This document shows positions 15,496 through 33,470 of a stretch of 64,000 nt of DNA, piece by piece. The stretch's first letter is position 1, and every line of letters starts with the position of its first letter. The notes under the pieces are model-generated. The model had not been told where the DNA came from. It did no database searches and was given only the letters and a program-made list of their open reading frames with translations. The translations under genes were made by a program, and so were the position numbers. The stretch covers positions 35,340,001 through 35,404,000 of the forward strand of contig NC_088858.1 of the NCBI RefSeq assembly GCF_963853765.1, read 5' to 3'. The DNA comes from Magallana gigas. Taxonomy: Eukaryota.

Positions 15496-16263
15496 ATGCA
15501 CAACCCCAGCATCAGCCTTCATTCTGTTACTATGTACCAGCACTTTAACAAGCTCTCCCTCAAGAAATCCTCTACACAAATGTCAGAAGTTGACTACATG
15601 GACATCATGAAAGACCAAGTTCCTTCAAACCAAGAAGCAGCTATACAGGACTTGGACATGTCTATCAATCTACCAGATATTGATAGAGCATCGGCATTGA
15701 CAAAATCAAAAGTCTTGGAGTCTACTGAAGCCATTTTGTCTACCCGCCTACTTTACGCCAAACGTAAAGAGAGTATTTCTCATGGATTAAGGACGGGCCG
15801 CTTCCCATCGTGGTTCGGAAGCAAACTCCATTGTGAGTTAAACCTCCCTAGAGAGGATAACGACAACTTTGGCACTTTTCTCCTTGGATTACAAAAAGAA
15901 ACTACCTCGGCGTTCGGAAACTCTATCCTAAGCTACCTAGAGCGCTTGATCAGTGAAAAAGAAAGTGAAAGTAACAAATTAAGGGCAGAACATTTAAAAA
16001 GTCTGCAAGCTGAAACCGACGGCTATACCTTTGCCACTGAAAAAAGAAAGTTAGACGATGCCATCACAGCCATAACGGCCAAGCACACGACTGAACTACA
16101 AGAACATCGTCAAAAACTTCTCTCGTTATATAATCAACCGACAAGACCGGGCCACGCATCGTACACGTCCACAAACCACAAAAGCCATTCCAAACAACAA
16201 AGGAATGTGGGACATTACCGATACAGAGGACATAGCTATGTTCAGAGAAACAAACCATATTAA
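15496..16263 (+). CDS. PLE ORF1, ~255 aa, helical/coiled-coil with basic C-terminal tail (monomer 1)
   Basis: Open frame (ATG at 15496) repeated in every monomer. Charged helical central region and His/Arg-rich tail ending RNKPY. Function unknown. Confidence 0.7.
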   Translation: MHNPSISLHSVTMYQHFNKLSLKKSSTQMSEVDYMDIMKDQVPSNQEAAIQDLDMSINLPDIDRASALTKSKVLESTEAILSTRLLYAKRKESISHGLRTGRFPSWFGSKLHCELNLPREDNDNFGTFLLGLQKETTSAFGNSILSYLERLISEKESESNKLRAEHLKSLQAETDGYTFATEKRKLDDAITAITAKHTTELQEHRQKLLSLYNQPTRPGHASYTSTNHKSHSKQQRNVGHYRYRGHSYVQRNKPY

Positions 16264-16803
16264 CTTTCATATATTCTGTGCTATTTGTATAACGCCTGCT
16301 TGCACCATTAATAGTGCACCTATTGCTTTGGCACTAAGAGCCTAAGTATTAAACCATATCATTTGAGACCAAGTTTCTGTCTCATTGCTTCAATATAGTT
16401 CATGACTTTTGATTCACTTTTATGTTTTTGTTTTATCTTTTTCATCCACTTGCATTGTTAATCCACTCAGGATCAACAATTGAAACTAAGACGGGTTCTC
16501 ATTTTTACCTCTAATATTACGACATAGCGTATATTAGACGGTAGGTGCTTTATTAAGAACCAATTACTACAATTCATAACCCATTAAGCACACACTGGGT
16601 TTGACTAACGCGATCGCACACAGCAGCCTCCACGTGACCGCAATTAATCTATAAATTGGGCTATCAGTTCTCACTGCGTTACATTACCAGTATCCTCTAA
16701 TCTACCAACACACATTGGTAATTAGACGGATTCCTACCTAACCTACACAATAATTGTTGTTATTGTACACACGCAGCTCCTCTATTTAAATGGCTCGACG
16801 ACC

Positions 16804-18693
16804 GTGAAACGCACGTGTAATTATTTACGGGCTTATCAGGCTCACTGTAAAAAATCTACGGCCATAGGAGACAAGCTCGTGTTAAACCTATCACGACACA
16901 CGCTATCCAAAGACGAGCTCTGACTTCTGAGCAAAGGCTTAAAATTCATTCCTACGCCAAAAAATAACAACGCTAAGCGTTTACTTCTCAAAGACTTTGA
17001 CGAATTTGCAAGAAAACTCAGATGCAAATTCCACTTTGATACCGGGGACAACTCGCCGATTCACCCCTTTAAAACAAAGTCTGGGTTTATGCCGCCTTTG
17101 GCTTGCCGAGAACTCGAGGATTACATAGATAAAACAAAACTTGAACTTTCCTCAATGGAAATTGTAAACACGAGATCGAATATCTCTAAATCTGAGAGAG
17201 CGGCTATTTTATCGCTTAAAAATAACAACGACATCGTTATAAAAAAAGCAGATAAAAGTAATACCATTGTCATTATGAACAGAGATCAGTATGTCTCAGA
17301 AGCACATCGACAATTGTTATCCAAACACTATATGCAAGTACCTGAACCGAACATGCTCAAGCTGCATAATGATATTCAAAATATACTTTCGGAAATGCAT
17401 ATAAATGGGTCACTAGACAAAGAAACTTACAAGTTTCTGAATGACAATAAACCGTCATTAAAATGTGGTCATCTTTATCTTCTACCAAAAACCCACAAAA
17501 TTCCTGAACACATTTACAACGCTTTAATGAACGGTCATTGCAGCATCAGAAAATTACCACCTGGTAGACCAATTATCGCGCAATGCAACACGCCGACAAG
17601 GAAAATAGGACAGTACTGCGATCACTTTCTCGTCCTTATCGTACAAAAACAATCAACGTATATTAAAGATACTGCGGACTTTATCAACAAAATTGAAAGC
17701 CTCACGCCGCCACCTAACGCATTATTAATTACTTATGACGTGACAAGCATGTACACAAACATGGAATTCAATGAACTTCTTTCATCGGTGCACGAGGCTT
17801 ACACGCAGGCTAATAAAATTAAATCAGACATTCCTTATCCCACACCCAAGGAGCTAACGCTATTATTGAAATGCGTTTTAGAAAACAATTACTTTGAATT
17901 TGACGGAAAATTCTACAAGCAAATCATTGGAGCAAGCATGGGTGCAATTCCAAGTCCAGAAATTTGTGACATTCGAATGTATCAAATCACACAGCATATT
18001 GTTACACAATTTCGTCATGCAAACAAAATTTTGTTCCATGGAAGATATCGGGATGATGGCTTTATTATATTCAATGGCACCACAGAGGAAATAGAGGATT
18101 TTTTTCAAATTGGCAATCATTGTCACAAGCATCTTCAATTTACGTTTGAAGTCTCACCATCTTCTGTGAACTTTCTTGATACTACAGTTTACAAAGGCCC
18201 CAGATTTCAAACCTTTAACAAGCTTGACATCAAGTCATTTATCAAACCTACAAACAACTTTCAATATCTACACAGACAGAGCGCTCATAGCCCATCTGTG
18301 TTTAAAGGTTTCATTAAAGGAGAATGCATTAGACATGCACGAAATACTACCGACCCTACAATTTTGAATGCTACACTCAATGATTTTAAGGCGCATCTGT
18401 CAAAGCGGGGCTACTCTCCCCAAGAAATCGACCCAATTATCAAAGAAACAACAAACACAAATCGAACAAAACTCATCCTCAATAAGACTCCAAAGCAAGC
18501 ACTACGTAACCCTACGGTATTGGTTACTAAATTCAATCCTTGCCTTAAAGGACTCAAAAAGCGAATTTTAAAGTATTGGGATATTGTACTTAGGAATTCT
18601 GAATGCAAATCTTCTTTTGATGCTCGACCTATTATAGCTTTCAGCAAGCACAAAAACATTAGCGACGAGATAATCAGGTCTCACTTAAAATAA
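16804..18693 (+). pseudogene. PLE RT, monomer 1, with in-frame nonsense codon
   Basis: TGA at 16921-16923 where the other copies have TCA. Otherwise nearly identical to the intact copies. Confidence 0.88.
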
Positions 18694-19899: not shown

Positions 19900-20439
19900 C
19901 TTTCATATATTCTGTGCTATTTGTATAACGCCTGCTTGCACCATTAATAGTGCACCTATTGCTTTGGCACTAAGAGCCTAAGTATTAAACCATATCATTT
20001 GAGACCAAGTTTCTGTCTCATTGCTTCAATATAGTTCATGACTTTTGATTCACTTTTATGTTTTTGTTTTATCTTTTTCATCCACTTGCATTGTTAATCC
20101 ACTCAGGATCAACAATTGAAACTAAGACGGGTTCTCATTTTTACCTCTAATATTACGACATAGCGTATATTAGACGGTAGGTGCTTTATTAAGAACCAAT
20201 TACTACAATTCATAACCCATTAAGCACACACTGGGTTTGACTAACGCGATCGCACACAGCAGCCTCCACGTGACCGCAATTAATCTATAAATTGGGCTAT
20301 CAGTTCTCACTGCGTTACATTACCAGTATCCTCTAATCTACCAACACACATTGGTAATTAGACGGATTCCTACCTAACCTACACAATAATTGTTGTTATT
20401 GTACACACGCAGCTCCTCTATTTAAATGGCTCGACGACC

Positions 20440-22329
20440 GTGAAACGCACGTGTAATTATTTACGGGCTTATCAGGCTCACTGTAAAAAATCTACGGCCA
20501 TAGGAGACAAGCTCGTGTTAAACCTATCACGACACACGCTATCCAAAGACGAGCTCTCACTTTTGAGCAAAGGCTTAAAATTCATTCCTACGCCAAAAAA
20601 TAACAACGCTAAGCGTTTACTTCTCAAAGACTTTGACGAATTTGCAAGAAAACTCAGATGCAAATTCCACTTTGATACCGGGGACAACTCGCCGATTCAC
20701 CCCTTTAAAACAAAGTCTGGGTTTATGCCGCCTTTGGCTTGCCGAGAACTCGAGGATTACATAGATAAAACAAAACTTGAACTTTCCTCAATGGAAATTG
20801 TAAACACGAGATCGAATATCTCTAAATCTGAGAGAGCGGCTATTTTATCGCTTAAAAATAACAACGACATCGTTATAAAAAAAGCAGATAAAAGTAATAC
20901 CATTGTCATTATGAACAGAGATCAGTATGTCTCAGAAGCACATCGACAATTGTTATCCAAACACTATATGCAAGTACCTGAACCGAACATGCTCAAGCTG
21001 CATAATGATATTCAAAATATACTTTCGGAAATGCATATAAATGGGTCACTAGACAAAGAAACTTACAAGTTTCTGAATGACAATAAACCGTCATTAAAAT
21101 GTGGTCATCTTTATCTTCTACCAAAAACCCACAAAATTCCTGAACACATTTACAACGCTTTAATGAACGGTCATTGCAGCATCAGAAAATTACCACCTGG
21201 TAGACCAATTATCGCGCAATGCAACACGCCGACAAGGAAAATAGGACAGTACTGCGATCACTTTCTCGTCCCTATCGTACAAAAACAATCAACGTATATT
21301 AAAGATACTGCGGACTTTATCAACAAAATTGAAAGCCTCACGCCGCCACCTAACGCATTATTAATTACTTATGACGTGACAAGCATGTACACAAACATGG
21401 AATTCAATGAACTTCTTTCATCGGTGCACGAGGCTTACACGCAGGCTAATAAAATTAAATCAGACATTCCTTATCCCACACCCAAGGAGCTAACGCTATT
21501 ATTGAAATGCGTTTTAGAAAACAATTACTTTGAATTTGACGGAAAATTCTACAAGCAAATCATTGGAGCAAGCATGGGTGCAATTCCAAGTCCAGAAATT
21601 TGTGACATTCGAATGTATCAAATCACACAGCATATTGTTACACAATTTCGTCATGCAAACAAAATTTTGTTCCATGGAAGATATCGGGATGATGGCTTTA
21701 TTATATTCAATGGCACCACAGAGGAAATAGAGGATTTTTTTCAAATTGGCAATCATTGTCACAAGCATCTTCAATTTACGTTTGAAGTCTCACCATCTTC
21801 TGTGAACTTTCTTGATACTACAGTTTACAAAGGCCCCAGATTTCAAACCTTTAACAAGCTTGACATCAAGTCATTTATCAAACCTACAAACAACTTTCAA
21901 TATCTACACAGACAGAGCGCTCATAGCCCATCTGTGTTTAAAGGTTTCATTAAAGGAGAATGCATTAGACATGCACGAAATACTACCGACCCTACAATTT
22001 TGAATGCTACACTCAATGATTTTAAGGCGCATCTGTCAAAGCGGGGCTACTCTCCCCAAGAAATCGACCCAATTATCAAAGAAACAACAAACACAAATCG
22101 AACAAAACTCATCCTCAATAAGACTCCAAAGCAAGCACTACGTAACCCTACGGTATTGGTTACTAAATTCAATCCTTGCCTTAAAGGACTCAAAAAGCGA
22201 ATTTTAAAGTATTGGGATATTGTACTTAGGAATTCTGAATGCAAATCTTCTTTTGATGCTCGACCTATTATAGCTTTCAGCAAGCACAAAAACATTAGCG
22301 ACGAGATAATCAGGTCTCACTTAAAATAA
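20440..22329 (+). CDS. PLE reverse transcriptase without GIY-YIG endonuclease (monomer 2, intact; true start uncertain)
   Basis: VLNLS..LS..E..LLSKGLKFIPTP, HLYLLPKTHK, PGRPII, YIKDT.DFI, TYDVTSMYTN, NYFEFDGKFYKQ..G.SMG, GRYRDDGF, VNFLD, KPTN..QYLH..S.H, KGE.IR. Ends PIIAFSKHKNISDEIIRSHLK*. Confidence 0.93.
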   Translation: MKRTCNYLRAYQAHCKKSTAIGDKLVLNLSRHTLSKDELSLLSKGLKFIPTPKNNNAKRLLLKDFDEFARKLRCKFHFDTGDNSPIHPFKTKSGFMPPLACRELEDYIDKTKLELSSMEIVNTRSNISKSERAAILSLKNNNDIVIKKADKSNTIVIMNRDQYVSEAHRQLLSKHYMQVPEPNMLKLHNDIQNILSEMHINGSLDKETYKFLNDNKPSLKCGHLYLLPKTHKIPEHIYNALMNGHCSIRKLPPGRPIIAQCNTPTRKIGQYCDHFLVPIVQKQSTYIKDTADFINKIESLTPPPNALLITYDVTSMYTNMEFNELLSSVHEAYTQANKIKSDIPYPTPKELTLLLKCVLENNYFEFDGKFYKQIIGASMGAIPSPEICDIRMYQITQHIVTQFRHANKILFHGRYRDDGFIIFNGTTEEIEDFFQIGNHCHKHLQFTFEVSPSSVNFLDTTVYKGPRFQTFNKLDIKSFIKPTNNFQYLHRQSAHSPSVFKGFIKGECIRHARNTTDPTILNATLNDFKAHLSKRGYSPQEIDPIIKETTNTNRTKLILNKTPKQALRNPTVLVTKFNPCLKGLKKRILKYWDIVLRNSECKSSFDARPIIAFSKHKNISDEIIRSHLK

Positions 22330-22767: not shown

Positions 22768-23535
22768 ATGCACAACCCCAGCATCAGCCTTCATTCTGTT
22801 ACTATGTACCAGCACTTTAACAAGCTCTCCCTCAAGAAATCCTCTACACAAATGTCAGAAGTTGACTACATGGACATCATGAAAGACCAAGTTCCTTCAA
22901 ACCAAGAAGCAGCTATACAGGACTTGGACATGTCTATCAATCTACCAGATATTGATAGAGCATCGGCATTGACAAAATCAAAAGTCTTGGAGTCTACTGA
23001 AGCCATTTTGTCTACCCGCCTACTTTACGCCAAACGTAAAGAGAGTATTTCTCATGGATTAAGGACGGGCCGCTTCCCATCGTGGTTCGGAAGCAAACTC
23101 CATTGTGAGTTAAACCTCCCTAGAGAGGATAACGACAACTTTGGCACTTTTCTCCTTGGATTACAAAAAGAAACTACCTCGGCGTTCGGAAACTCTATCC
23201 TAAGCTACCTAGAGCGCTTGATCAGTGAAAAAGAAAGTGAAAGTAACAAATTAAGGGCAGAACATTTAAAAAGTCTGCAAGCTGAAACCGACGGCTATAC
23301 CTTTGCCACTGAAAAAAGAAAGTTAGACGATGCCATCACAGCCATAACGGCCAAGCACACGACTGAACTACAAGAACATCGTCAAAAACTTCTCTCGTTA
23401 TATAATCAACCGACAAGACCGGGCCACGCATCGTACACGTCCACAAACCACAAAAGCCATTCCAAACAACAAAGGAATGTGGGACATTACCGATACAGAG
23501 GACATAGCTATGTTCAGAGAAACAAACCATATTAA
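22768..23535 (+). CDS. PLE ORF1 (monomer 3)
   Basis: Same protein as monomer 1 ORF1. Confidence 0.7.
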   Translation: MHNPSISLHSVTMYQHFNKLSLKKSSTQMSEVDYMDIMKDQVPSNQEAAIQDLDMSINLPDIDRASALTKSKVLESTEAILSTRLLYAKRKESISHGLRTGRFPSWFGSKLHCELNLPREDNDNFGTFLLGLQKETTSAFGNSILSYLERLISEKESESNKLRAEHLKSLQAETDGYTFATEKRKLDDAITAITAKHTTELQEHRQKLLSLYNQPTRPGHASYTSTNHKSHSKQQRNVGHYRYRGHSYVQRNKPY

Positions 23536-24075
23536 CTTTCATATATTCTGTGCTATTTGTATAACGCCTGCTTGCACCATTAATAGTGCACCTATTGCTT
23601 TGGCACTAAGAGCCTAAGTATTAAACCATATCATTTGAGACCAAGTTTCTGTCTCATTGCTTCAATATAGTTCATGACTTTTGATTCACTTTTATGTTTT
23701 TGTTTTATCTTTTTCATCCACTTGCATTGTTAATCCACTCAGGATCAACAATTGAAACTAAGACGGGTTCTCATTTTTACCTCTAATATTACGACATAGC
23801 GTATATTAGACGGTAGGTGCTTTATTAAGAACCAATTACTACAATTCATAACCCATTAAGCACACACTGGGTTTGACTAACGCGATCGCACACAGCAGCC
23901 TCCACGTGACCGCAATTAATCTATAAATTGGGCTATCAGTTCTCACTGCGTTACATTACCAGTATCCTCTAATCTACCAACACACATTGGTAATTAGACG
24001 GATTCCTACCTAACCTACACAATAATTGTTGTTATTGTACACACGCAGCTCCTCTATTTAAATGGCTCGACGACC

Positions 24076-25920
24076 GTGAAACGCACGTGTAATTATTTAC
24101 GGGCTTATCAGGCTCACTGTAAAAAATCTACGGCCATAGGAGACAAGCTCGTGTTAAACCTATCACGACACACGCTATCCAAAGACGAGCTCTCACTTTT
24201 GAGCAAAGGCTTAAAATTCATTCCTACGCCAAAAAATAACAACGCTAAGCGTTTACTTCTCAAAGACTTTGACGAATTTGCAAGAAAACTCAGATGCAAA
24301 TTCCACTTTGATACCGGGGACAACTCGCCGATTCACCCCTTTAAAACAAAGTCTGGGTTTATGCCGCCTTTGGCTTGCCGAGAACTCGAGGATTACATAG
24401 ATAAAACAAAACTTGAACTTTCCTCAATGGAAATTGTAAACACGAGATCGAATATCTCTAAATCTGAGAGAGCGGCTATTTTATCGCTTAAAAATAACAA
24501 CGACATCGTTATAAAAAAAGCAGATAAAAGTAATACCATTGTCATTATGAACAGAGATCAGTATGTCTCAGAAGCACATCGACAATTGTTATCCAAACAC
24601 TATATGCAAGTACCTGAACCGAACATGCTCAAGCTGCATAATGATATTCAAAATATACTTTCGGAAATGCATATAAATGGGTCACTAGACAAAGAAACTT
24701 ACAAGTTTCTGAATGACAATAAACCGTCATTAAAATGTGGTCATCTTTATCTTCTACCAAAAACCCACAAAATTCCTGAACACATTTACAACGCTTTAAT
24801 GAACGGTCATTGCAGCATCAGAAAATTACCACCTGGTAGACCAATTATCGCGCAATGCAACACGCCGACAAGGAAAATAGGACAGTACTGCGATCACTTT
24901 CTCGTCCCTATCGTACAAAAACAATCAACGTATATTAAAGATACTGCGGACTTTATCAACAAAATTGAAAGCCTCACGCCGCCACCTAACGCATTATTAA
25001 TTACTTATGACGTGACAAGCATGTACACAAACATGGAATTCAATGAACTTCTTTCATCGGTGCACGAGGCTTACACGCAGGCTAATAAAATTAAATCAGA
25101 CATTCCTTATCCCACACCCAAGGAGCTAACGCTATTATTGAAATGCGTTTTAGAAAACAATTACTTTGAATTTGACGGAAAATTCTACAAGCAAATCATT
25201 GGAGCAAGCATGGGTGCAATTCCAAGTCCAGAAATTTGTGACATTCGAATGTATCAAATCACACAGCATATTGTTACACAATTTCGTCATGCAAACAAAA
25301 TTTTGTTCCATGGAAGATATCGGGATGATGGCTTTATTATATTCAATGGCACCACAGAGGAAATAGAGGATTTTTTTCAAATTGGCAATCATTGTCACAA
25401 GCATCTTCAATTTACGTTTGAAGTCTCACCATCTTCTGTGAACTTTCTTGATACTACAGTTTACAAAGGCCCCAGATTTCAAACCTTTAACAAGCTTGAC
25501 ATCAAGTCATTTATCAAACCTACAAACAACTTTCAATATCTACACAGACAGAGCGCTCATAGCCCATCTGTGTTTAAAGGTTTCATTAAAGGAGAATGCA
25601 TTAGACATGCACGAAATACTACCGACCCTACAATTTTGAATGCTACACTCAATGATTTTAAGGCGCATCTGTCAAAGCGGGGCTACTCTCCCCAAGAAAT
25701 CGACCCAATTATCAAAGAAACAACAAACACAAATCGAACAAAACTCATCCTCAATAAGACTCCAAAGCAAGCACTACGTAACCCTACGGTATTGGTTACT
25801 AAATTCAATCCTTGCCTTAAAGGACTCAAAAAGCGAATTTTAAAGTATTGGGATATTGTACTTAGGAATTCTGAATGCAAATCTTCTTTTGATGCTCGAC
25901 CTATTATAGCTTTCAGCTAA
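24076..25920 (+). CDS. PLE RT (monomer 3), last 15 aa lost by deletion
   Basis: Ends PIIAFS* at a junction that deletes ~364 bp, including the hammerhead, with filler TAACATTT (25918-25925). Confidence 0.88.
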   Translation: MKRTCNYLRAYQAHCKKSTAIGDKLVLNLSRHTLSKDELSLLSKGLKFIPTPKNNNAKRLLLKDFDEFARKLRCKFHFDTGDNSPIHPFKTKSGFMPPLACRELEDYIDKTKLELSSMEIVNTRSNISKSERAAILSLKNNNDIVIKKADKSNTIVIMNRDQYVSEAHRQLLSKHYMQVPEPNMLKLHNDIQNILSEMHINGSLDKETYKFLNDNKPSLKCGHLYLLPKTHKIPEHIYNALMNGHCSIRKLPPGRPIIAQCNTPTRKIGQYCDHFLVPIVQKQSTYIKDTADFINKIESLTPPPNALLITYDVTSMYTNMEFNELLSSVHEAYTQANKIKSDIPYPTPKELTLLLKCVLENNYFEFDGKFYKQIIGASMGAIPSPEICDIRMYQITQHIVTQFRHANKILFHGRYRDDGFIIFNGTTEEIEDFFQIGNHCHKHLQFTFEVSPSSVNFLDTTVYKGPRFQTFNKLDIKSFIKPTNNFQYLHRQSAHSPSVFKGFIKGECIRHARNTTDPTILNATLNDFKAHLSKRGYSPQEIDPIIKETTNTNRTKLILNKTPKQALRNPTVLVTKFNPCLKGLKKRILKYWDIVLRNSECKSSFDARPIIAFS

Positions 25921-26047
25921 CATTTGACATTTTACTACCATCACTTCCTTTACCAAATTAACTTGAATATGTAAAGGACTGGATTGCTACTTCAAAGTTG
26001 GTTTATTATACTTCTCTTATAAATCAAACACATTGGTTTATTCAAAT

Positions 26048-26731
26048 ATGCACAACCCCAGCATCAGCCTTCATTCTGTTACTATGTACCAGCACTTTAA
26101 CAAGCTCTCCCTCAAGAAATCCTCTACACAAATGTCAGAAGTTGACTACATGGACATCATGAAAGACCAAGTTCCTTCAAACCAAGAAGCAGCTATACAG
26201 GACTTGGACATGTCTATCAATCTACCAGATATTGATAGAGCATCGGCATTGACAAAATCAAAAGTCTTGGAGTCTACTGAAGCCATTTTGTCTACCCGCC
26301 TACTTTACGCCAAACGTGGAGAGGATAACGACAACTTTGGCACTTTTCTCCTTGGATTACAAAAAGAAACTACCTCGGCGTTCGGAAACTCTATCCTAAG
26401 CTACCTAGAGCGCTTGATCAGTGAAAAAGAAAGTGAAAGTAACAAATTAAGGGCAGAACATTTAAAAAGTCTGCAAGCTGAAACCGACGGCTATACCTTT
26501 GCCACTGAAAAAAGAAAGTTAGACGATGCCATCACAGCCATAACGGCCAAGCACACGACTGAACTACAAGAACATCGTCAAAAACTTCTCTCGTTATATA
26601 ATCAACCGACAAGACCGGGCCACGCATCGTACACGTCCACAAACCACAAAAGCCATTCCAAACAACAAAGGAATGTGGGACATTACCGATACAGAGGACA
26701 TAGCTATGTTCAGAGAAACAAACCATATTAA
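26048..26731 (+). CDS. PLE ORF1 (monomer 4) with net 84-bp in-frame deletion
   Basis: YAKR-G-EDND junction at ~26317; 28 aa shorter than the other copies. Confidence 0.65.
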   Translation: MHNPSISLHSVTMYQHFNKLSLKKSSTQMSEVDYMDIMKDQVPSNQEAAIQDLDMSINLPDIDRASALTKSKVLESTEAILSTRLLYAKRGEDNDNFGTFLLGLQKETTSAFGNSILSYLERLISEKESESNKLRAEHLKSLQAETDGYTFATEKRKLDDAITAITAKHTTELQEHRQKLLSLYNQPTRPGHASYTSTNHKSHSKQQRNVGHYRYRGHSYVQRNKPY

Positions 26732-29599: not shown

Positions 29600-30367
29600 A
29601 TGCACAACCCCAGCATCAGCCTTCATTCTGTTACTATGTACCAGCACTTTAACAAGCTCTCCCTCAAGAAATCCTCTACACAAATGTCAGAAGTTGACTA
29701 CATGGACATCATGAAAGACCAAGTTCCTTCAAACCAAGAAGCAGCTATACAGGACTTGGACATGTCTATCAATCTACCAGATATTGATAGAGCATCGGCA
29801 TTGACAAAATCAAAAGTCTTGGAGTCTACTGAAGCCATTTTGTCTACCCGCCTACTTTACGCCAAACGTAAAGAGAGTATTTCTCATGGATTAAGGACGG
29901 GCCGCTTCCCATCGTGGTTCGGAAGCAAACTCCATTGTGAGTTAAACCTCCCTAGAGAGGATAACGACAACTTTGGCACTTTTCTCCTTGGATTACAAAA
30001 AGAAACTACCTCGGCGTTCGGAAACTCTATCCTAAGCTACCTAGAGCGCTTGATCAGTGAAAAAGAAAGTGAAAGTAACAAATTAAGGGCAGAACATTTA
30101 AAAAGTCTGCAAGCTGAAACCGACGGCTATACCTTTGCCACTGAAAAAAGAAAGTTAGACGATGCCATCACAGCCATAACGGCCAAGCACACGACTGAAC
30201 TACAAGAACATCGTCAAAAACTTCTCTCGTTATATAATCAACCGACAAGACCGGGCCACGCATCGTACACGTCCACAAACCACAAAAGCCATTCCAAACA
30301 ACAAAGGAATGTGGGACATTACCGATACAGAGGACATAGCTATGTTCAGAGAAACAAACCATATTAA
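29600..30367 (+). CDS. PLE ORF1 (monomer 5)
   Basis: Same protein as monomer 1 ORF1. Confidence 0.7.
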   Translation: MHNPSISLHSVTMYQHFNKLSLKKSSTQMSEVDYMDIMKDQVPSNQEAAIQDLDMSINLPDIDRASALTKSKVLESTEAILSTRLLYAKRKESISHGLRTGRFPSWFGSKLHCELNLPREDNDNFGTFLLGLQKETTSAFGNSILSYLERLISEKESESNKLRAEHLKSLQAETDGYTFATEKRKLDDAITAITAKHTTELQEHRQKLLSLYNQPTRPGHASYTSTNHKSHSKQQRNVGHYRYRGHSYVQRNKPY

Positions 30368-32815: not shown

Positions 32816-32937
32816 GACCCCTGATGAGGCTCATAACTGCCGAAACACTCTACAACTATTAGTACTTGCATATTTTAAATTGCAATTTGCTTTTTTGCAA
32901 AACATTACACTATCTTTGTGGTTTGGAGTGTCGGGTC
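32816..32937 (+). ncRNA. Type I hammerhead ribozyme (terminal copy)
   Basis: Same motif as 15076-15197; predicted cleavage after 32932. Confidence 0.88.
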
Positions 32938-33470
32938 CTAATAAATCCCTTACAAGTCTGGTTGATTGATGTCGCTAATTTTCACACTTCAACGTTGAAT
33001 CAACGTTGAATAATGGTTGAACAACGTTGTAACTTGATTTCAACCTTTCCTCAACGTTGAAACAACGTTGCGTGCCCACTGGGTTATAGGTCCCCATCTT
33101 TATATCCAAGTGATTTTCGGATGAATGACATTACTATTACTGTGGTTTCATTAATATTCAAGGGTATCAATTTTCGTGGATATAGGGAAAATCATAGTTT
33201 CGAGGATACGAAAATTCGTGGCCAGTGACCCTATCAATACAAAATGTTAATAGAAATTGCACTTTAATGAACATTTAATTTCGTTGATCAACTTAACAAC
33301 GAAATCCACGAAAATTAGTATTCAATGAATATTGATGAAACCACAGTATTTAAGGTGCCTACCTCCTTGAACTAGATGGTATCACGCTGCGTGGAAATTA
33401 ACACTTTCAACATTACTATGATTTATACAACGCTCAATATGATGGACACTATTTTTTGTTCACTTTTAGT

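What the first reader, a model, noticed from the sequence alone, without database searches (positions are those of the whole stretch)
15496..16263. ORF1: unrecognised ~255-aa helical protein ending in an R-x2-PY motif
Seen: open in all five monomers, and the one deletion in it keeps the frame. It has an acidic N-terminal part, an amphipathic/coiled-coil middle (LERLISEKESESNKLRAEHLKSLQ) and a His/Arg/Tyr-rich tail ending RNKPY. Inference: a Gag-like RNA chaperone or RNP scaffold. The tail fits a PY-type nuclear localisation signal. The YAKRKESISHGLRTGRFPSWF segment weakly recalls the helical N-terminal region of long single-ORF PLEs, suggesting a split of an ancestral ORF. It could instead supply the missing targeting function.
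Basis: inference. Interest (0 to 1): 0.7.

Follow-up and report, generated by a model that had tools for sequence, protein, structure and literature searches.

The report
Accessory protein of oyster Penelope-like retroelement
This is a real, selected but unnamed first gene of an endonuclease-less "jumping gene" family of bivalves: a small helical protein whose basic tail ends in a conserved proline-tyrosine signal that most likely carries it into the nucleus.

Summary
The monomers differ by at most 2 nt, so that adds no evidence of selection. The evidence comes from elsewhere. Diverged intact copies in the same genome (37-44% identity) and 83 clusters in public data form one family of about 220-250 aa. 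Every copy examined lies 5' of a ~640-aa Penelope-like RT that lacks the GIY-YIG nuclease. dN/dS is 0.10-0.15 where dS is unsaturated.

The conserved start is probably Met13 (15532), giving 243 aa. AlphaFold2 gives a disordered acidic N-terminus with conserved short motifs, a confident three-helix bundle rather than an extended coiled coil, and a disordered basic tail. The tail meets all sequence rules of a basic PY-NLS, and the terminal PY is kept down to about 20% identity.

No Pfam, PDB-sequence or specific fold match was found. A sister clade of single-ORF, also nuclease-less elements carries an N-terminal domain that aligns weakly to ORF1 (hhalign P 8.5e-4) with the same helix/18-residue-loop/helix layout.

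RNA binding, nuclear import and any targeting role are inferred, not shown. I class it as a new protein family of a known kind (retrotransposon ORF1).

The parts
15496..16263 (+). ORF1, monomer 1, from the first ATG to the stop (255 codons plus TAA)
15532..15534 (+). Probable true start codon (Met13 of the 255-aa frame), giving a 243-aa protein. It is the Met of the conserved N-terminal motif M-x3-F-N-[KR]-L-S-L-[KN]-K.
   Evidence: Start conserved in all 11 aligned subfamily members; upstream codons are not conserved
15532..15681 (+). Residues 1-50: acidic, predicted disordered N-terminal region. It holds conserved short motifs: KLSLKK, PSNQEA and DLD-x-S/T-x-N-L.
   Evidence: pLDDT about 50; N33, Q34, E35 and D42 conserved in at least 90% of 31 sequences; pI 4.65
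15682..16131 (+). Residues 51-200: three-helix bundle core. Helix 51-88, an 18-residue loop 89-106, helix 107-161, helix 164-200.
   Evidence: AlphaFold2 on a 31-sequence alignment: pLDDT 86-98 across residues 61-200 (65 for 51-60), pTM 0.60; only generic helical-bundle matches
15760..15846 (+). Most conserved block, residues 77-105: KRKES..G..tGrFPsWF.....C...L. It contains the invariant E80 and P92 and near-invariant C101. This is also the block that aligns to the N-terminal domain of sister single-ORF elements.
16132..16260 (+). Residues 201-243: disordered basic tail rich in His, Arg, Tyr, Gln and Asn (net +8, no Asp or Glu). Candidate RNA-binding and import-signal region.
   Evidence: pLDDT 44-58; composition; equivalent tails in relatives are basic and RG-rich in six of them
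16246..16260 (+). C-terminal R-N-K-P-Y, followed directly by the stop at 16261-16263. It matches the R/K/H-x2-5-PY core of a PY-NLS.
   Evidence: Y243 conserved in at least 90% of A3; 22 of 31 A3 members and 27 of 54 tail-bearing hits keep R/K/H-x2-5-PY within the last 6 residues, and 19 of the 54 end exactly in PY; rules from PMC7930572
19132..19899 (+). ORF1, monomer 2 (one substitution, M29R)
22768..23535 (+). ORF1, monomer 3 (identical to monomer 1)
26048..26731 (+). ORF1, monomer 4. It has an 84-nt in-frame deletion (junction 26316/26317) that removes the 28 most conserved residues, so it is probably non-functional.
29600..30367 (+). ORF1, monomer 5 (identical to monomer 1)
19900..20425 (+). 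ORF1-ORF2 spacer of about 526 nt, closed in frame (9 stops in one frame). Relatives have an equivalent spacer of about 450-600 nt.
   Evidence: (the error message counts the stops)
20426..22329 (+). ORF2 of monomer 2, the Penelope-like reverse transcriptase without GIY-YIG. In every window monomer a 28-nt deletion after codon 4 shifts the frame, so the RT frame lacks its own ATG here.

Best explanation
ORF1 encodes the stand-alone, non-enzymatic accessory protein (ORF1p) of a two-ORF, endonuclease-less Penelope-like retroelement lineage of bivalves.

Shown:
- It is a conserved family under purifying selection.
- In every copy examined it lies 5' of the RT gene, from which a closed spacer separates it.
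- The RT gene starts at its own conserved AUG.

Inferred mechanism:
- ORF1p is translated separately from the RT.
- Its three-helix bundle and conserved acidic N-terminal motifs make protein contacts, with the RT or with host factors.
- Its disordered Arg/His/Tyr-rich tail (RG-rich in some relatives) binds the element RNA.
- The terminal basic stretch plus R-x2-PY acts as a basic PY-type nuclear localisation signal read by transportin (Kap-beta2). ORF1p, probably with bound RNA, would thereby reach the nucleus where reverse transcription at DNA 3' ends takes place.

ORF1 probably shares ancestry with the N-terminal domain that sister single-ORF elements carry fused to their RT. A separately made protein needs its own import signal, which would explain the PY tail. 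The RT keeps a KR-rich N-terminus.
For: Family and linkage:
- There are 36 matches in the own genome. Intact subfamilies at 37-44% identity each lie upstream of an RT ORF of about 640-670 aa, in tandem arrays of about 3.6 kb.
- A profile search of 1.84 billion representative proteins gave 83 hits, 50 of them below 1e-10. Full-length hits are 205-298 aa.
- All five outside contigs examined carry ORF1 next to an RT of 571-659 aa, on either side as expected in tandem arrays. One of them is a tandem array of period 3622.

Selection:
- dN/dS is 0.10-0.15 (dN 0.046, dS 0.31-0.44) for one pair and 0.12 for another.
- Window versus P0002 gives dN 0.28 with saturated dS. Differences by codon position are 64/50/135.
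- ORF1 diverges faster than the RT: 37-44% against 65-68% identity between the same subfamilies.

Structure: AlphaFold2 pLDDT is 86-98 for residues 61-200, modelled as a three-helix bundle. Residues 1-50 and 201-243 are predicted disordered.

PY-NLS rules (PMC7930572) are a disordered segment, overall basic character, and a basic patch followed by R/K/H-x2-5-PY. All three are met. Y243 is at least 90% conserved. PY is terminal or near-terminal in 22 of 31 aligned members, and 6 more end in Tyr.

Separate translation:
- The stop follows PY directly.
- The spacer has 9 stops in one frame.
- The ORF2 N-terminus MARRF[NK][RK], followed by a KR-rich stretch, is conserved across the clade.

No nuclease: ORF2 residues 40-594 and 587-643 align to residues 24-565 and 702-756 of an EN+ relative. 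The GIY-YIG block of that relative (Pfam 595-683) has no counterpart in ORF2.

Shared ancestry with the fused domain:
- hhalign P 0.0097, improving to 8.5e-4 with a more diverse core alignment, in the same register.
- 0 of 200 shuffled and 0 of 2 reversed controls reach the real score.
- Both models show helix, an 18-residue Pro-containing loop, then a long helix.
- The two forms are sister RT clades with 99-100 support.
Against: - There is no experimental or sequence-family evidence for RNA binding: no CCHC, RRM or other nucleic-acid-binding domain, and no Pfam, PDB-sequence or specific fold match.
- The homodimer prediction gave no verdict.
- PY-NLSs are loosely defined, so matching the rules does not show transportin binding.
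- Nine of 31 aligned members lack PY.
- Homology to the fused N-terminal domain is below conventional significance (hhalign probability 24%; HMMER finds nothing).
- All window monomers carry a frameshifted ORF2 and one carries a crippled ORF1. This particular array may therefore be inert.
Confidence: 0.5

Rival explanations
1. ORF1p replaces the lost endonuclease functionally. It would act as an adaptor that brings the RT-RNA complex to free DNA 3' ends such as breaks, replication forks or particular repeats. The tail and N-terminal motifs would bind DNA or host repair and replication factors rather than serve packaging or import.
For: - Both EN-less clades, A and B, carry this domain. The three EN+ outgroup proteins have no N-terminal extension, as their RT lies at the same offset as in ORF2; DNA upstream of them was not examined.
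- The elements are interstitial, not telomeric, so some alternative way of finding 3'-OH ends is needed (Craig et al. 2021, PMC8557442).
- The N-terminal linear motifs are conserved and have no known partner.
Against: - No DNA-binding or repair-factor-like domain or fold was found.
- The CAACGTTG repeats that flank this array are absent from the other copies examined, so no common target is visible.
- Only three EN+ relatives were sampled, and the DNA upstream of them was not examined.
Confidence: 0.12
2. The conserved C-terminal basic-PY end is not a nuclear import signal. It would be a different C-terminal motif, for example a docking site for the RT or another host protein, or a Tyr-dependent contact with RNA. 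The rest of the ORF1p reading stands.
For: - Tyr is better conserved than Pro. Six aligned members end in RY, KY or YY rather than PY.
- PY-NLS rules are permissive (PMC7930572).
- The protein also has a KRKES patch, and ORF2 has a KR-rich N-terminus, either of which could mediate classical import.
Against: The combination of predicted disorder, net charge +8, R/K/H-x2-5-PY and a position at the very C-terminus is that of FUS and EWS, whose C-terminal tyrosine forms the PY of their PY-NLS. Sister-clade fused forms lack the PY tail, which fits a signal needed only by the free protein.
Confidence: 0.25
3. ORF1 is not a stand-alone gene. It would be the first exon or part of an ORF1-RT fusion made by splicing, readthrough or frameshifting, as in the sister clade.
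For: - Sister-clade elements have the domain fused to the RT. In other copies it is separated only by a 35-nt overlap or by a single stop.
- PLEs are known to keep introns, and ORF1 can be joined by frameshift (Fig. 1 legend of PMC8557442).
Against: - The spacer is 450-600 nt in all clade-B members and has many stops.
- The stop position is conserved right after PY.
- The tail up to the stop is under constraint.
- ORF2 begins with its own conserved Met-Ala-Arg-Arg-Phe N-terminus.
Confidence: 0.06
4. The frame is a non-functional open frame kept by chance or by recent amplification.
For: The five window monomers are near-identical, so their openness alone proves nothing.
Against: - The frame is intact at 37-44% identity in six other loci and in many outside contigs.
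- dN/dS is 0.10-0.15.
- Third-position differences are in excess.
- There are 83 clusters in public data.
Confidence: 0.02

Closest known systems
ORF1 or 'structural' coiled-coil ORFs of endonuclease-deficient Athena PLEs and Terminons (bdelloid rotifers)
   Same: An extra, non-enzymatic, helical ORF 5' of a Penelope-like RT that lacks GIY-YIG. The Fig. 1 legend of PMC8557442 shows ORF1 and coiled-coil labels for some PLE types. [quoted passage not shown]
   Different: Athena elements are telomeric, carry reverse-complement telomeric repeats and are rotifer-specific. The present elements are interstitial in a bivalve genome, and no telomeric repeats were found. No Athena ORF1 sequence was available here, so homology is untested.
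N-terminal ~270-aa domain of sister single-ORF, endonuclease-less PLEs
   Same: - Same position 5' of the RT N-motifs, in the sister RT clade.
- Acidic disordered start, helix, 18-residue loop with an invariant Pro, then a long helix.
- Collinear hhalign match, P 8.5e-4.
- Some copies are split from the RT by a frameshift or a stop.
   Different: It is fused to the RT, has no basic PY tail and continues into a KR-rich linker. Sequence similarity is too weak for HMMER and hhalign probability is only 24%.
C-terminal PY-NLS of FET proteins (FUS, EWS)
   Same: A disordered, basic C-terminal stretch ending in PY, with the final tyrosine being the PY tyrosine (PMC7930572). Six ORF1 relatives have RG-rich tails just upstream of the end; four of them end in PY or near it and two end RYH or RYY. 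That FET proteins have an RGG region next to their PY-NLS is from my own knowledge.
   Different: There is no homology outside the motif. Binding to transportin is untested. The window copy's tail is rich in His, Tyr and Gln rather than RGG.
LINE-1 ORF1p and other non-LTR ORF1 proteins
   Same: A small protein encoded 5' of the RT, faster-evolving than the RT, helical, with basic nucleic-acid-binding potential and a presumed RNP role. PMC3905857 describes such ORF1ps as multi-domain and presumed to act in RNP formation.
   Different: There is no Pfam match of any kind, so no Transposase_22, RRM, CCHC or esterase domain. The model is an intramolecular three-helix bundle, not a trimeric coiled coil.
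Upstream gag-like zf-CCHC ORF of Chlamys-2_cBra (a PLE of green algae)
   Same: A separate upstream ORF in a PLE (PMC8557442).
   Different: That ORF has a zinc knuckle. ORF1 here has a single conserved Cys and no knuckle.

Membership tests
PY-NLS (transportin/Kap-beta2 cargo signal) | Signal lies in a structurally disordered segment of about 15-30 residues | tested here: met
   Residues 208-213 and 222-243 have pLDDT below 50, with no secondary structure after residue 200. Rule taken from PMC7930572.
PY-NLS (transportin/Kap-beta2 cargo signal) | Overall basic character, with an N-terminal basic (or hydrophobic) patch | tested here: met
   The 201-243 tail has 8 K+R, 5 H, no D or E, and net charge +8.2 at pH 7. 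Tails of relatives have net +4 to +12.
PY-NLS (transportin/Kap-beta2 cargo signal) | C-terminal R/K/H-x2-5-P-Y motif | tested here: met
   R239-N-K-P-Y243. The motif is kept in 22 of 31 aligned members and in 27 of 54 tail-bearing hits.
PY-NLS (transportin/Kap-beta2 cargo signal) | Binds transportin and drives Ran-dependent nuclear import | not testable with these tools
   Needs a binding or localisation assay. Complex prediction references cover only bacteria, archaea and phages.
Retrotransposon ORF1 / Gag-like RNP protein | Encoded 5' of the RT in the same element and co-inherited with it | tested here: met
   Same layout in six own-genome loci and five outside contigs.
Retrotransposon ORF1 / Gag-like RNP protein | Under purifying selection as a protein | tested here: met
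   dN/dS 0.10-0.15, with an excess of third-position differences.
Retrotransposon ORF1 / Gag-like RNP protein | Recognisable nucleic-acid-binding module (CCHC knuckle, RRM, Transposase_22 CTD) | tested here: not met
   No Pfam family for the window protein at E up to 10, and only scattered sub-threshold hits in 8 members. Only a basic tail, RG-rich in some members.
Retrotransposon ORF1 / Gag-like RNP protein | Self-association (coiled-coil multimer) | tested here: inconclusive
   The AlphaFold2 monomer folds the helices into an intramolecular bundle. The homodimer job returned no verdict.
Endonuclease-deficient PLEs of the Athena/Coprina type (context of ORF1) | RT of Penelope type without the GIY-YIG domain | tested here: met
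   RVT_1 is the only enzymatic hit. The GIY-YIG block of EN+ relative P0208 has no counterpart in ORF2.
Endonuclease-deficient PLEs of the Athena/Coprina type (context of ORF1) | Telomeric or subtelomeric location, with reverse-complement telomeric repeats at the 3' end | tested here: not met
   Copies lie at internal positions of 50-76 Mb contigs. There is one 1-mismatch hit to (TTAGGG)2 in the window, far from the array and at chance level. The array ends abut CAACGTTG repeats.
Endonuclease-deficient PLEs of the Athena/Coprina type (context of ORF1) | RT groups with Athena or Coprina reference sequences in a phylogeny | not testable with these tools
   No reference PLE clade sequences (Repbase) were available. 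The tree contains only session hits.

The most novel reading that the evidence does not exclude
ORF1p and its fused counterpart in the sister clade would be the hallmark domain of a large, so far unnamed lineage of endonuclease-less Penelope-like elements. These elements spread interstitially as tandem arrays in bivalves and perhaps other marine invertebrates. The domain would be the innovation that let them dispense with the GIY-YIG nuclease, by escorting the RT-RNA complex into the nucleus and to usable DNA 3' ends. Transportin-dependent import through a terminal PY signal would be a new entry route for a retroelement RNP.
Probability: 0.12. Interest if true: 0.75.

Novelty: new variant of a known kind. 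Interest (0 to 1): 0.5.

Why it matters
Penelope-like elements are usually described as single-ORF elements. Their nuclease-less forms are described as telomere-bound (PMC8557442; a 2026 preprint, 10.64898/2026.07.22.740005, still lists only Athena and Coprina as EN-minus).

Here a diverse nuclease-less lineage sits inside bivalve chromosomes and has kept a second protein under selection. No source that holds the ORF1 proteins gives them a name.

A defined 243-aa protein with a confident core model and a short, mutable terminal motif gives a direct handle on two open questions. One is how such elements assemble and enter the nucleus. The other is how they prime without a nuclease.

The likely split or fusion relation with the sister clade also shows how retroelement gene architecture changes. 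For genome annotation, the ORF1 family can serve as a marker for this lineage. Its RT proteins are currently labelled 'uncharacterized protein' in oyster, mussel, scallop and pearl-oyster records.

Tried and rejected
- Pfam on ORF1 and on 8 family members gave nothing at or near threshold.
- A PDB sequence profile search gave only a RecF coiled-coil region at E 0.07.
- ESM Atlas feature search: best score 0.86, uninformative.
- Complex prediction on two copies of residues 45-205 returned 'no answer'. This is neither support nor evidence against self-association.
- P0088, a 615-aa secreted repeat protein with a 'GSFPSWYGLGT' motif, hit the ORF1 profile at E 7e-4. hhalign gives 6.7% probability over 32 columns and Pfam shows nothing related, so I treat it as a chance motif match.
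- The ORF1 HMM against 120 RT proteins and the six-frame translations of three sister-clade loci gave no hit below E 0.4. The fused-domain relationship is therefore visible only at profile-profile level.
- An Rfam scan of the array at E up to 1 gave no family. A CUGAUGA...GAAAC hammerhead core is nevertheless visible by eye near 32820-32846.
- Telomeric repeats: none at the element ends.
- CAACGTTG as a common target: rejected, because it is absent from the other loci.
- Gladyshev and Arkhipova 2007 (PMC1890498) is not held, and the supplements of PMC8557442 are not held. Athena ORF1 could therefore not be compared.
These include the 834-aa RT frame at C4:41.59 Mb and the EN+ element with a frameshifted ORF1 noted in s1-375641.
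Full report
**1. What is in the window**

Positions 12.5-33 kb hold a head-to-tail array of a 3636-bp unit. It has five ORF1-bearing monomers, one of them shortened to 3196 bp. An inverted partial copy sits at the left end. Each unit has four parts:
- ORF1, 768 nt.
- A closed spacer of about 526 nt.
- An RT frame of about 629 codons. Its only enzymatic Pfam hit is a weak RVT_1 match.
- About 420 nt of non-coding 3' sequence.

The window is G000:C6:35.34-35.40 Mb of a 564-Mb, 29-contig assembly. RT relatives are annotated in Saccostrea, Pinctada, Mytilus and Argopecten.

**2. The observation**

ORF1 at 15496-16263 is 255 codons plus a stop. The four full copies differ by one nucleotide. Monomer 4 has an 84-nt in-frame deletion, so the description is correct.

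Two qualifications apply:
- Five near-identical duplicates are one observation, not five.
- The in-frame deletion removes exactly the block that is most conserved in the family, so that copy is probably dead despite its open frame.

The start that all subfamilies share is the Met of MYQHFNKLSLKK (15532), which gives 243 aa. The 12 upstream codons are not conserved. I number from that Met.

**3. Is it a real gene?**

Yes.

*Copies elsewhere in the genome.* A six-frame search of the whole genome found 36 matches. They include intact copies on four other chromosome-scale contigs at 37-44% amino-acid identity. Each has the same layout: ORF1, a spacer, then an RT ORF of about 640-670 aa. Several are in tandem arrays of about 3.6 kb.

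*Selection.*
- Pairs with unsaturated synonymous divergence give dN/dS of 0.10-0.15 and 0.12.
- The window copy against a 63%-identical metagenomic relative has dN 0.28 with saturated dS. Differences at codon positions 1, 2 and 3 number 64, 50 and 135.

*Public data.*
- A profile of eight members, searched against 1.84 billion representative proteins, found 83 clusters. Fifty are below 1e-10, and full-length ones are 205-298 aa.
- None of the ten looked up carries a name, and neither do the eight word-search hits.
- Five outside contigs that I opened show ORF1 next to an RT of 571-659 aa. One is a tandem array with period 3622.

*Relative rate.* Between the same subfamilies ORF1 is 37-44% identical while the RT is 65-68% identical. 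A faster-evolving ORF1 is the usual pattern for retrotransposon ORF1/Gag proteins (my own knowledge).

**4. Anatomy of the protein**

A 31-sequence alignment, reaching down to 18% identity with the window copy, has these conserved positions:
- Invariant: E80 and P92.
- Conserved in at least 90%: N33, Q34, E35, D42, R72, C101 and Y243.

AlphaFold2 on that alignment gives pTM 0.60 and three regions:

| Residues | Prediction | Features |
|---|---|---|
| 1-50 | disordered | acidic, pI 4.65; carries the conserved KLSLKK, PSNQEA and DLD-x-S/T-x-N-L motifs |
| 51-200 | three helices (51-88, 107-161, 164-200) | pLDDT 86-98 over 61-200; 18-residue loop at 89-106 holds GrFPsWF...C..NL |
| 201-243 | disordered | net +8, no acidic residue, ends RNKPY |

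The 'coiled-coil middle' is therefore modelled as an intramolecular up-down-up bundle. AlphaFold2 can fold true intermolecular coiled coils this way, and the homodimer job gave no verdict, so the oligomeric state stays open.

No Pfam, PDB-sequence or specific structural relative was found. Structural hits are generic three-helix bundles at scores the tool itself flags as common for helical proteins.

**5. The PY end**

The review PMC7930572 defines a PY-NLS by three rules:
- A disordered stretch of 15-30 residues.
- Overall basic character.
- A basic or hydrophobic patch followed by R/K/H-x2-5-PY.

It also notes that in FUS and EWS the PY tyrosine is the C-terminal residue. The ORF1 tail meets all three rules.

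The stronger argument is conservation. The tail is otherwise hardly alignable, yet R/K/H-x2-5-PY sits at or within four residues of the C-terminus in 22 of 31 aligned members, and six more end in Tyr. Among 54 database hits that keep a tail, 27 have the motif and 19 end exactly in PY. Most of the remainder are evidently truncated or frameshifted gene calls. Six relatives have RG-rich tails. An RGG stretch next to a terminal PY resembles the FET-protein arrangement; that comparison is from my own knowledge.

The sequence evidence for a PY-type signal is as good as sequence alone can give. Function remains untested.

**6. Context: no nuclease, not telomeric, separate translation**

*No nuclease.* ORF2 aligns to an EN+ relative, P0208, in two blocks:

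| ORF2 residues | P0208 residues |
|---|---|
| 40-594 | 24-565 |
| 587-643 | 702-756 |

The GIY-YIG block of P0208 (Pfam 595-683) lies between the two aligned blocks and has no counterpart in ORF2.

*Not telomeric.* Copies are interstitial on 50-76 Mb contigs. No telomeric repeats lie at the element ends.

*Separate translation.* ORF2 in intact copies and across the clade begins MARRF[NK][RK], followed by about 40 KR-rich residues. The spacer is closed, and the ORF1 stop follows PY directly. Together these argue that ORF1p and the RT are made separately.

*State of the window array.* All window monomers carry a 28-nt deletion after ORF2 codon 4, relative to two copies on contig 9. This shifts the frame and removes the RT's own AUG. 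Some monomers also have internal stops. This array therefore looks like an amplified defective copy.

**7. Relation to single-ORF elements**

The RT search also found proteins of 797-878 aa (plus a 947-aa variant carrying an internal duplication) at 32-36% identity. Their extra ~270 residues are N-terminal and they also lack a nuclease. Their loci show no separate ORF1.

A FastTree of 84 RT proteins, rooted on the C-terminal EN+ relatives, puts all nuclease-less sequences on one long branch (support 100). That group splits into two parts:
- Clade A: 17 rows, the N-extended forms, support 99.
- Clade B: 63 rows, all of about 640 aa and of the two-ORF type, including the window family, support 99.

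The evidence that ORF1 and the clade A extension are related is as follows:
- HMMER sees no similarity.
- hhalign aligns ORF1 residues 74-162 with residues 76-163 of the extension, at P 0.0097.
- None of 100 column shuffles (12.0 ± 1.9, maximum 18.0), 100 block shuffles (14.8 ± 2.0, maximum 24.8) or two reversed controls (15.6 and 17.4) reaches the real score of 25.2.
- A more diverse, core-only alignment raises the match to P 8.5e-4 and probability 24%, in the same register.
- AlphaFold2 of the extension gives the same sequence of elements as ORF1: an acidic disordered start, a helix, an 18-residue loop with the invariant Pro, then a long helix.
- In clade A some abundant copies have the domain split from the RT by a 35-nt overlap or by a single stop.

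I put shared ancestry at roughly two in three. The direction, split or fusion, cannot be decided from these data. The EN+ outgroup proteins show no such N-terminal extension, because their RT lies at the same offset as in ORF2. The DNA upstream of them was not examined.

The fused and near-fused forms lack the PY tail. This fits the idea that the signal serves the free protein.

**8. Mechanism**

*Shown:*
- A conserved, selected protein.
- Its linkage to a nuclease-less RT.
- The domain layout.
- A motif that matches the PY-NLS rules.

*Inferred:*
- ORF1p binds the element RNA through its basic tail.
- It contacts the RT or host factors through the bundle and the acidic motifs.
- It is imported by transportin.

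*Not supported by any result here:* a role in choosing the integration site.

**9. Novelty**

Extra ORFs are known in some PLEs:
- ORF1 and coiled-coil labels in the Fig. 1 legend of PMC8557442.
- Structural coiled-coil ORFs in Terminons (PMC6431247).
- A zinc-knuckle ORF in one Chlamys family.

The kind is therefore known. This family is unnamed in every source that returned it. It has no detectable relatives outside its elements. It carries a conserved terminal PY signal that I did not find described for a retroelement ORF1 in the papers searched. It belongs to an interstitial nuclease-less lineage that the literature I could read does not list. It may exist in Repbase, which I could not consult.

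Noticed in passing
window 20426-20440 (and the same point in every monomer); compared with L037:4620-4780 and L038:4660-4820: All window monomers have a 28-nt deletion after ORF2 codon 4, relative to two copies on contig 9. Those copies start MARRLNRRSKQNKTVKR. Here the ATG runs into a TGA after five codons, and the RT frame continues from a GTG without its own AUG. This explains the 'no AUG for 121 codons / mini-ORF' note made on this window.
   Followed up: yes
window 16795-18690 and 24067-25926: The RT frames of monomer 1 and monomer 3 each carry an internal stop, TGA and TAA respectively. With the frameshift above, the array looks like an amplified defective copy.
   Followed up: partly
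window 12439-12519 and 32990-33070: Both outer ends of the array are element 3' ends that abut short runs of the palindrome CAACGTTG. The motif occurs 12 times in the window and not at all in 13 other loci of the family, so it is a local host repeat rather than a family-wide target.
   Followed up: partly
window 32820-32846 (repeated in each unit): A CUGAUGA-GGC-loop-GCC-GAAAC hammerhead-like core with a 3-bp stem II is visible by eye downstream of ORF2. The Rfam scan at E up to 1 reported nothing for the array.
   Followed up: partly
L023:1501-2628(-), L028:433-1995(+), L029:1501-2043(-); protein P0009: Fragments of an ORF1 of another subfamily are joined in frame to what looks, by eye, like an LTR-retrotransposon integrase fragment (HHIHDKMGHQGRDRT...; not scanned). 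The same junction (…AEIFYQNFIVYDSLPEDTSVNSHCNPPQEF…) recurs at two loci (L023, L028) and in P0009, so a chimeric unit has been copied.
   Followed up: no
L037:2768-4696(-) versus P0208: In the EN+ relative the GIY-YIG block lies between two segments that are contiguous in the nuclease-less RT. Both proteins share the last ~55 residues (…AFSK.KN..D.…S.LK). The nuclease-less state thus looks like a clean excision of the nuclease block, or the EN+ state like an insertion.
   Followed up: partly
window 15532-15567 and L037 ORF2 start; P0096-P0171 N-termini: ORF1 (M-x-x-[RH]-F-N-[KR]-L-S-L-K-K) and ORF2 (M-A-R-R-F-[NK]-[RK]) both open with a similar R-F-N-K/R motif that is conserved in each family. 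I have no explanation for this.
   Followed up: no
L048:484-1191 / 1157-3103 and L049:548-1150 / 1163-3094: In the sister clade, abundant copies (clusters of 32 and 62 members) have the N-terminal domain separated from the RT by a 35-nt overlap in another frame, or by a single stop. This could be programmed frameshifting or readthrough, or decay.
   Followed up: partly
L024:523-978(-) and L028:433-1400(+): Next to PLE fragments lies a tandem repeat that reads as an open frame with a unit of about 60 aa (…KSWYFFDKLSEIKILAICTPLIYVQLICKRTTSYLENCRRSYPYNEGTLYAIFCQKMTKF…). It is probably a satellite.
   Followed up: no
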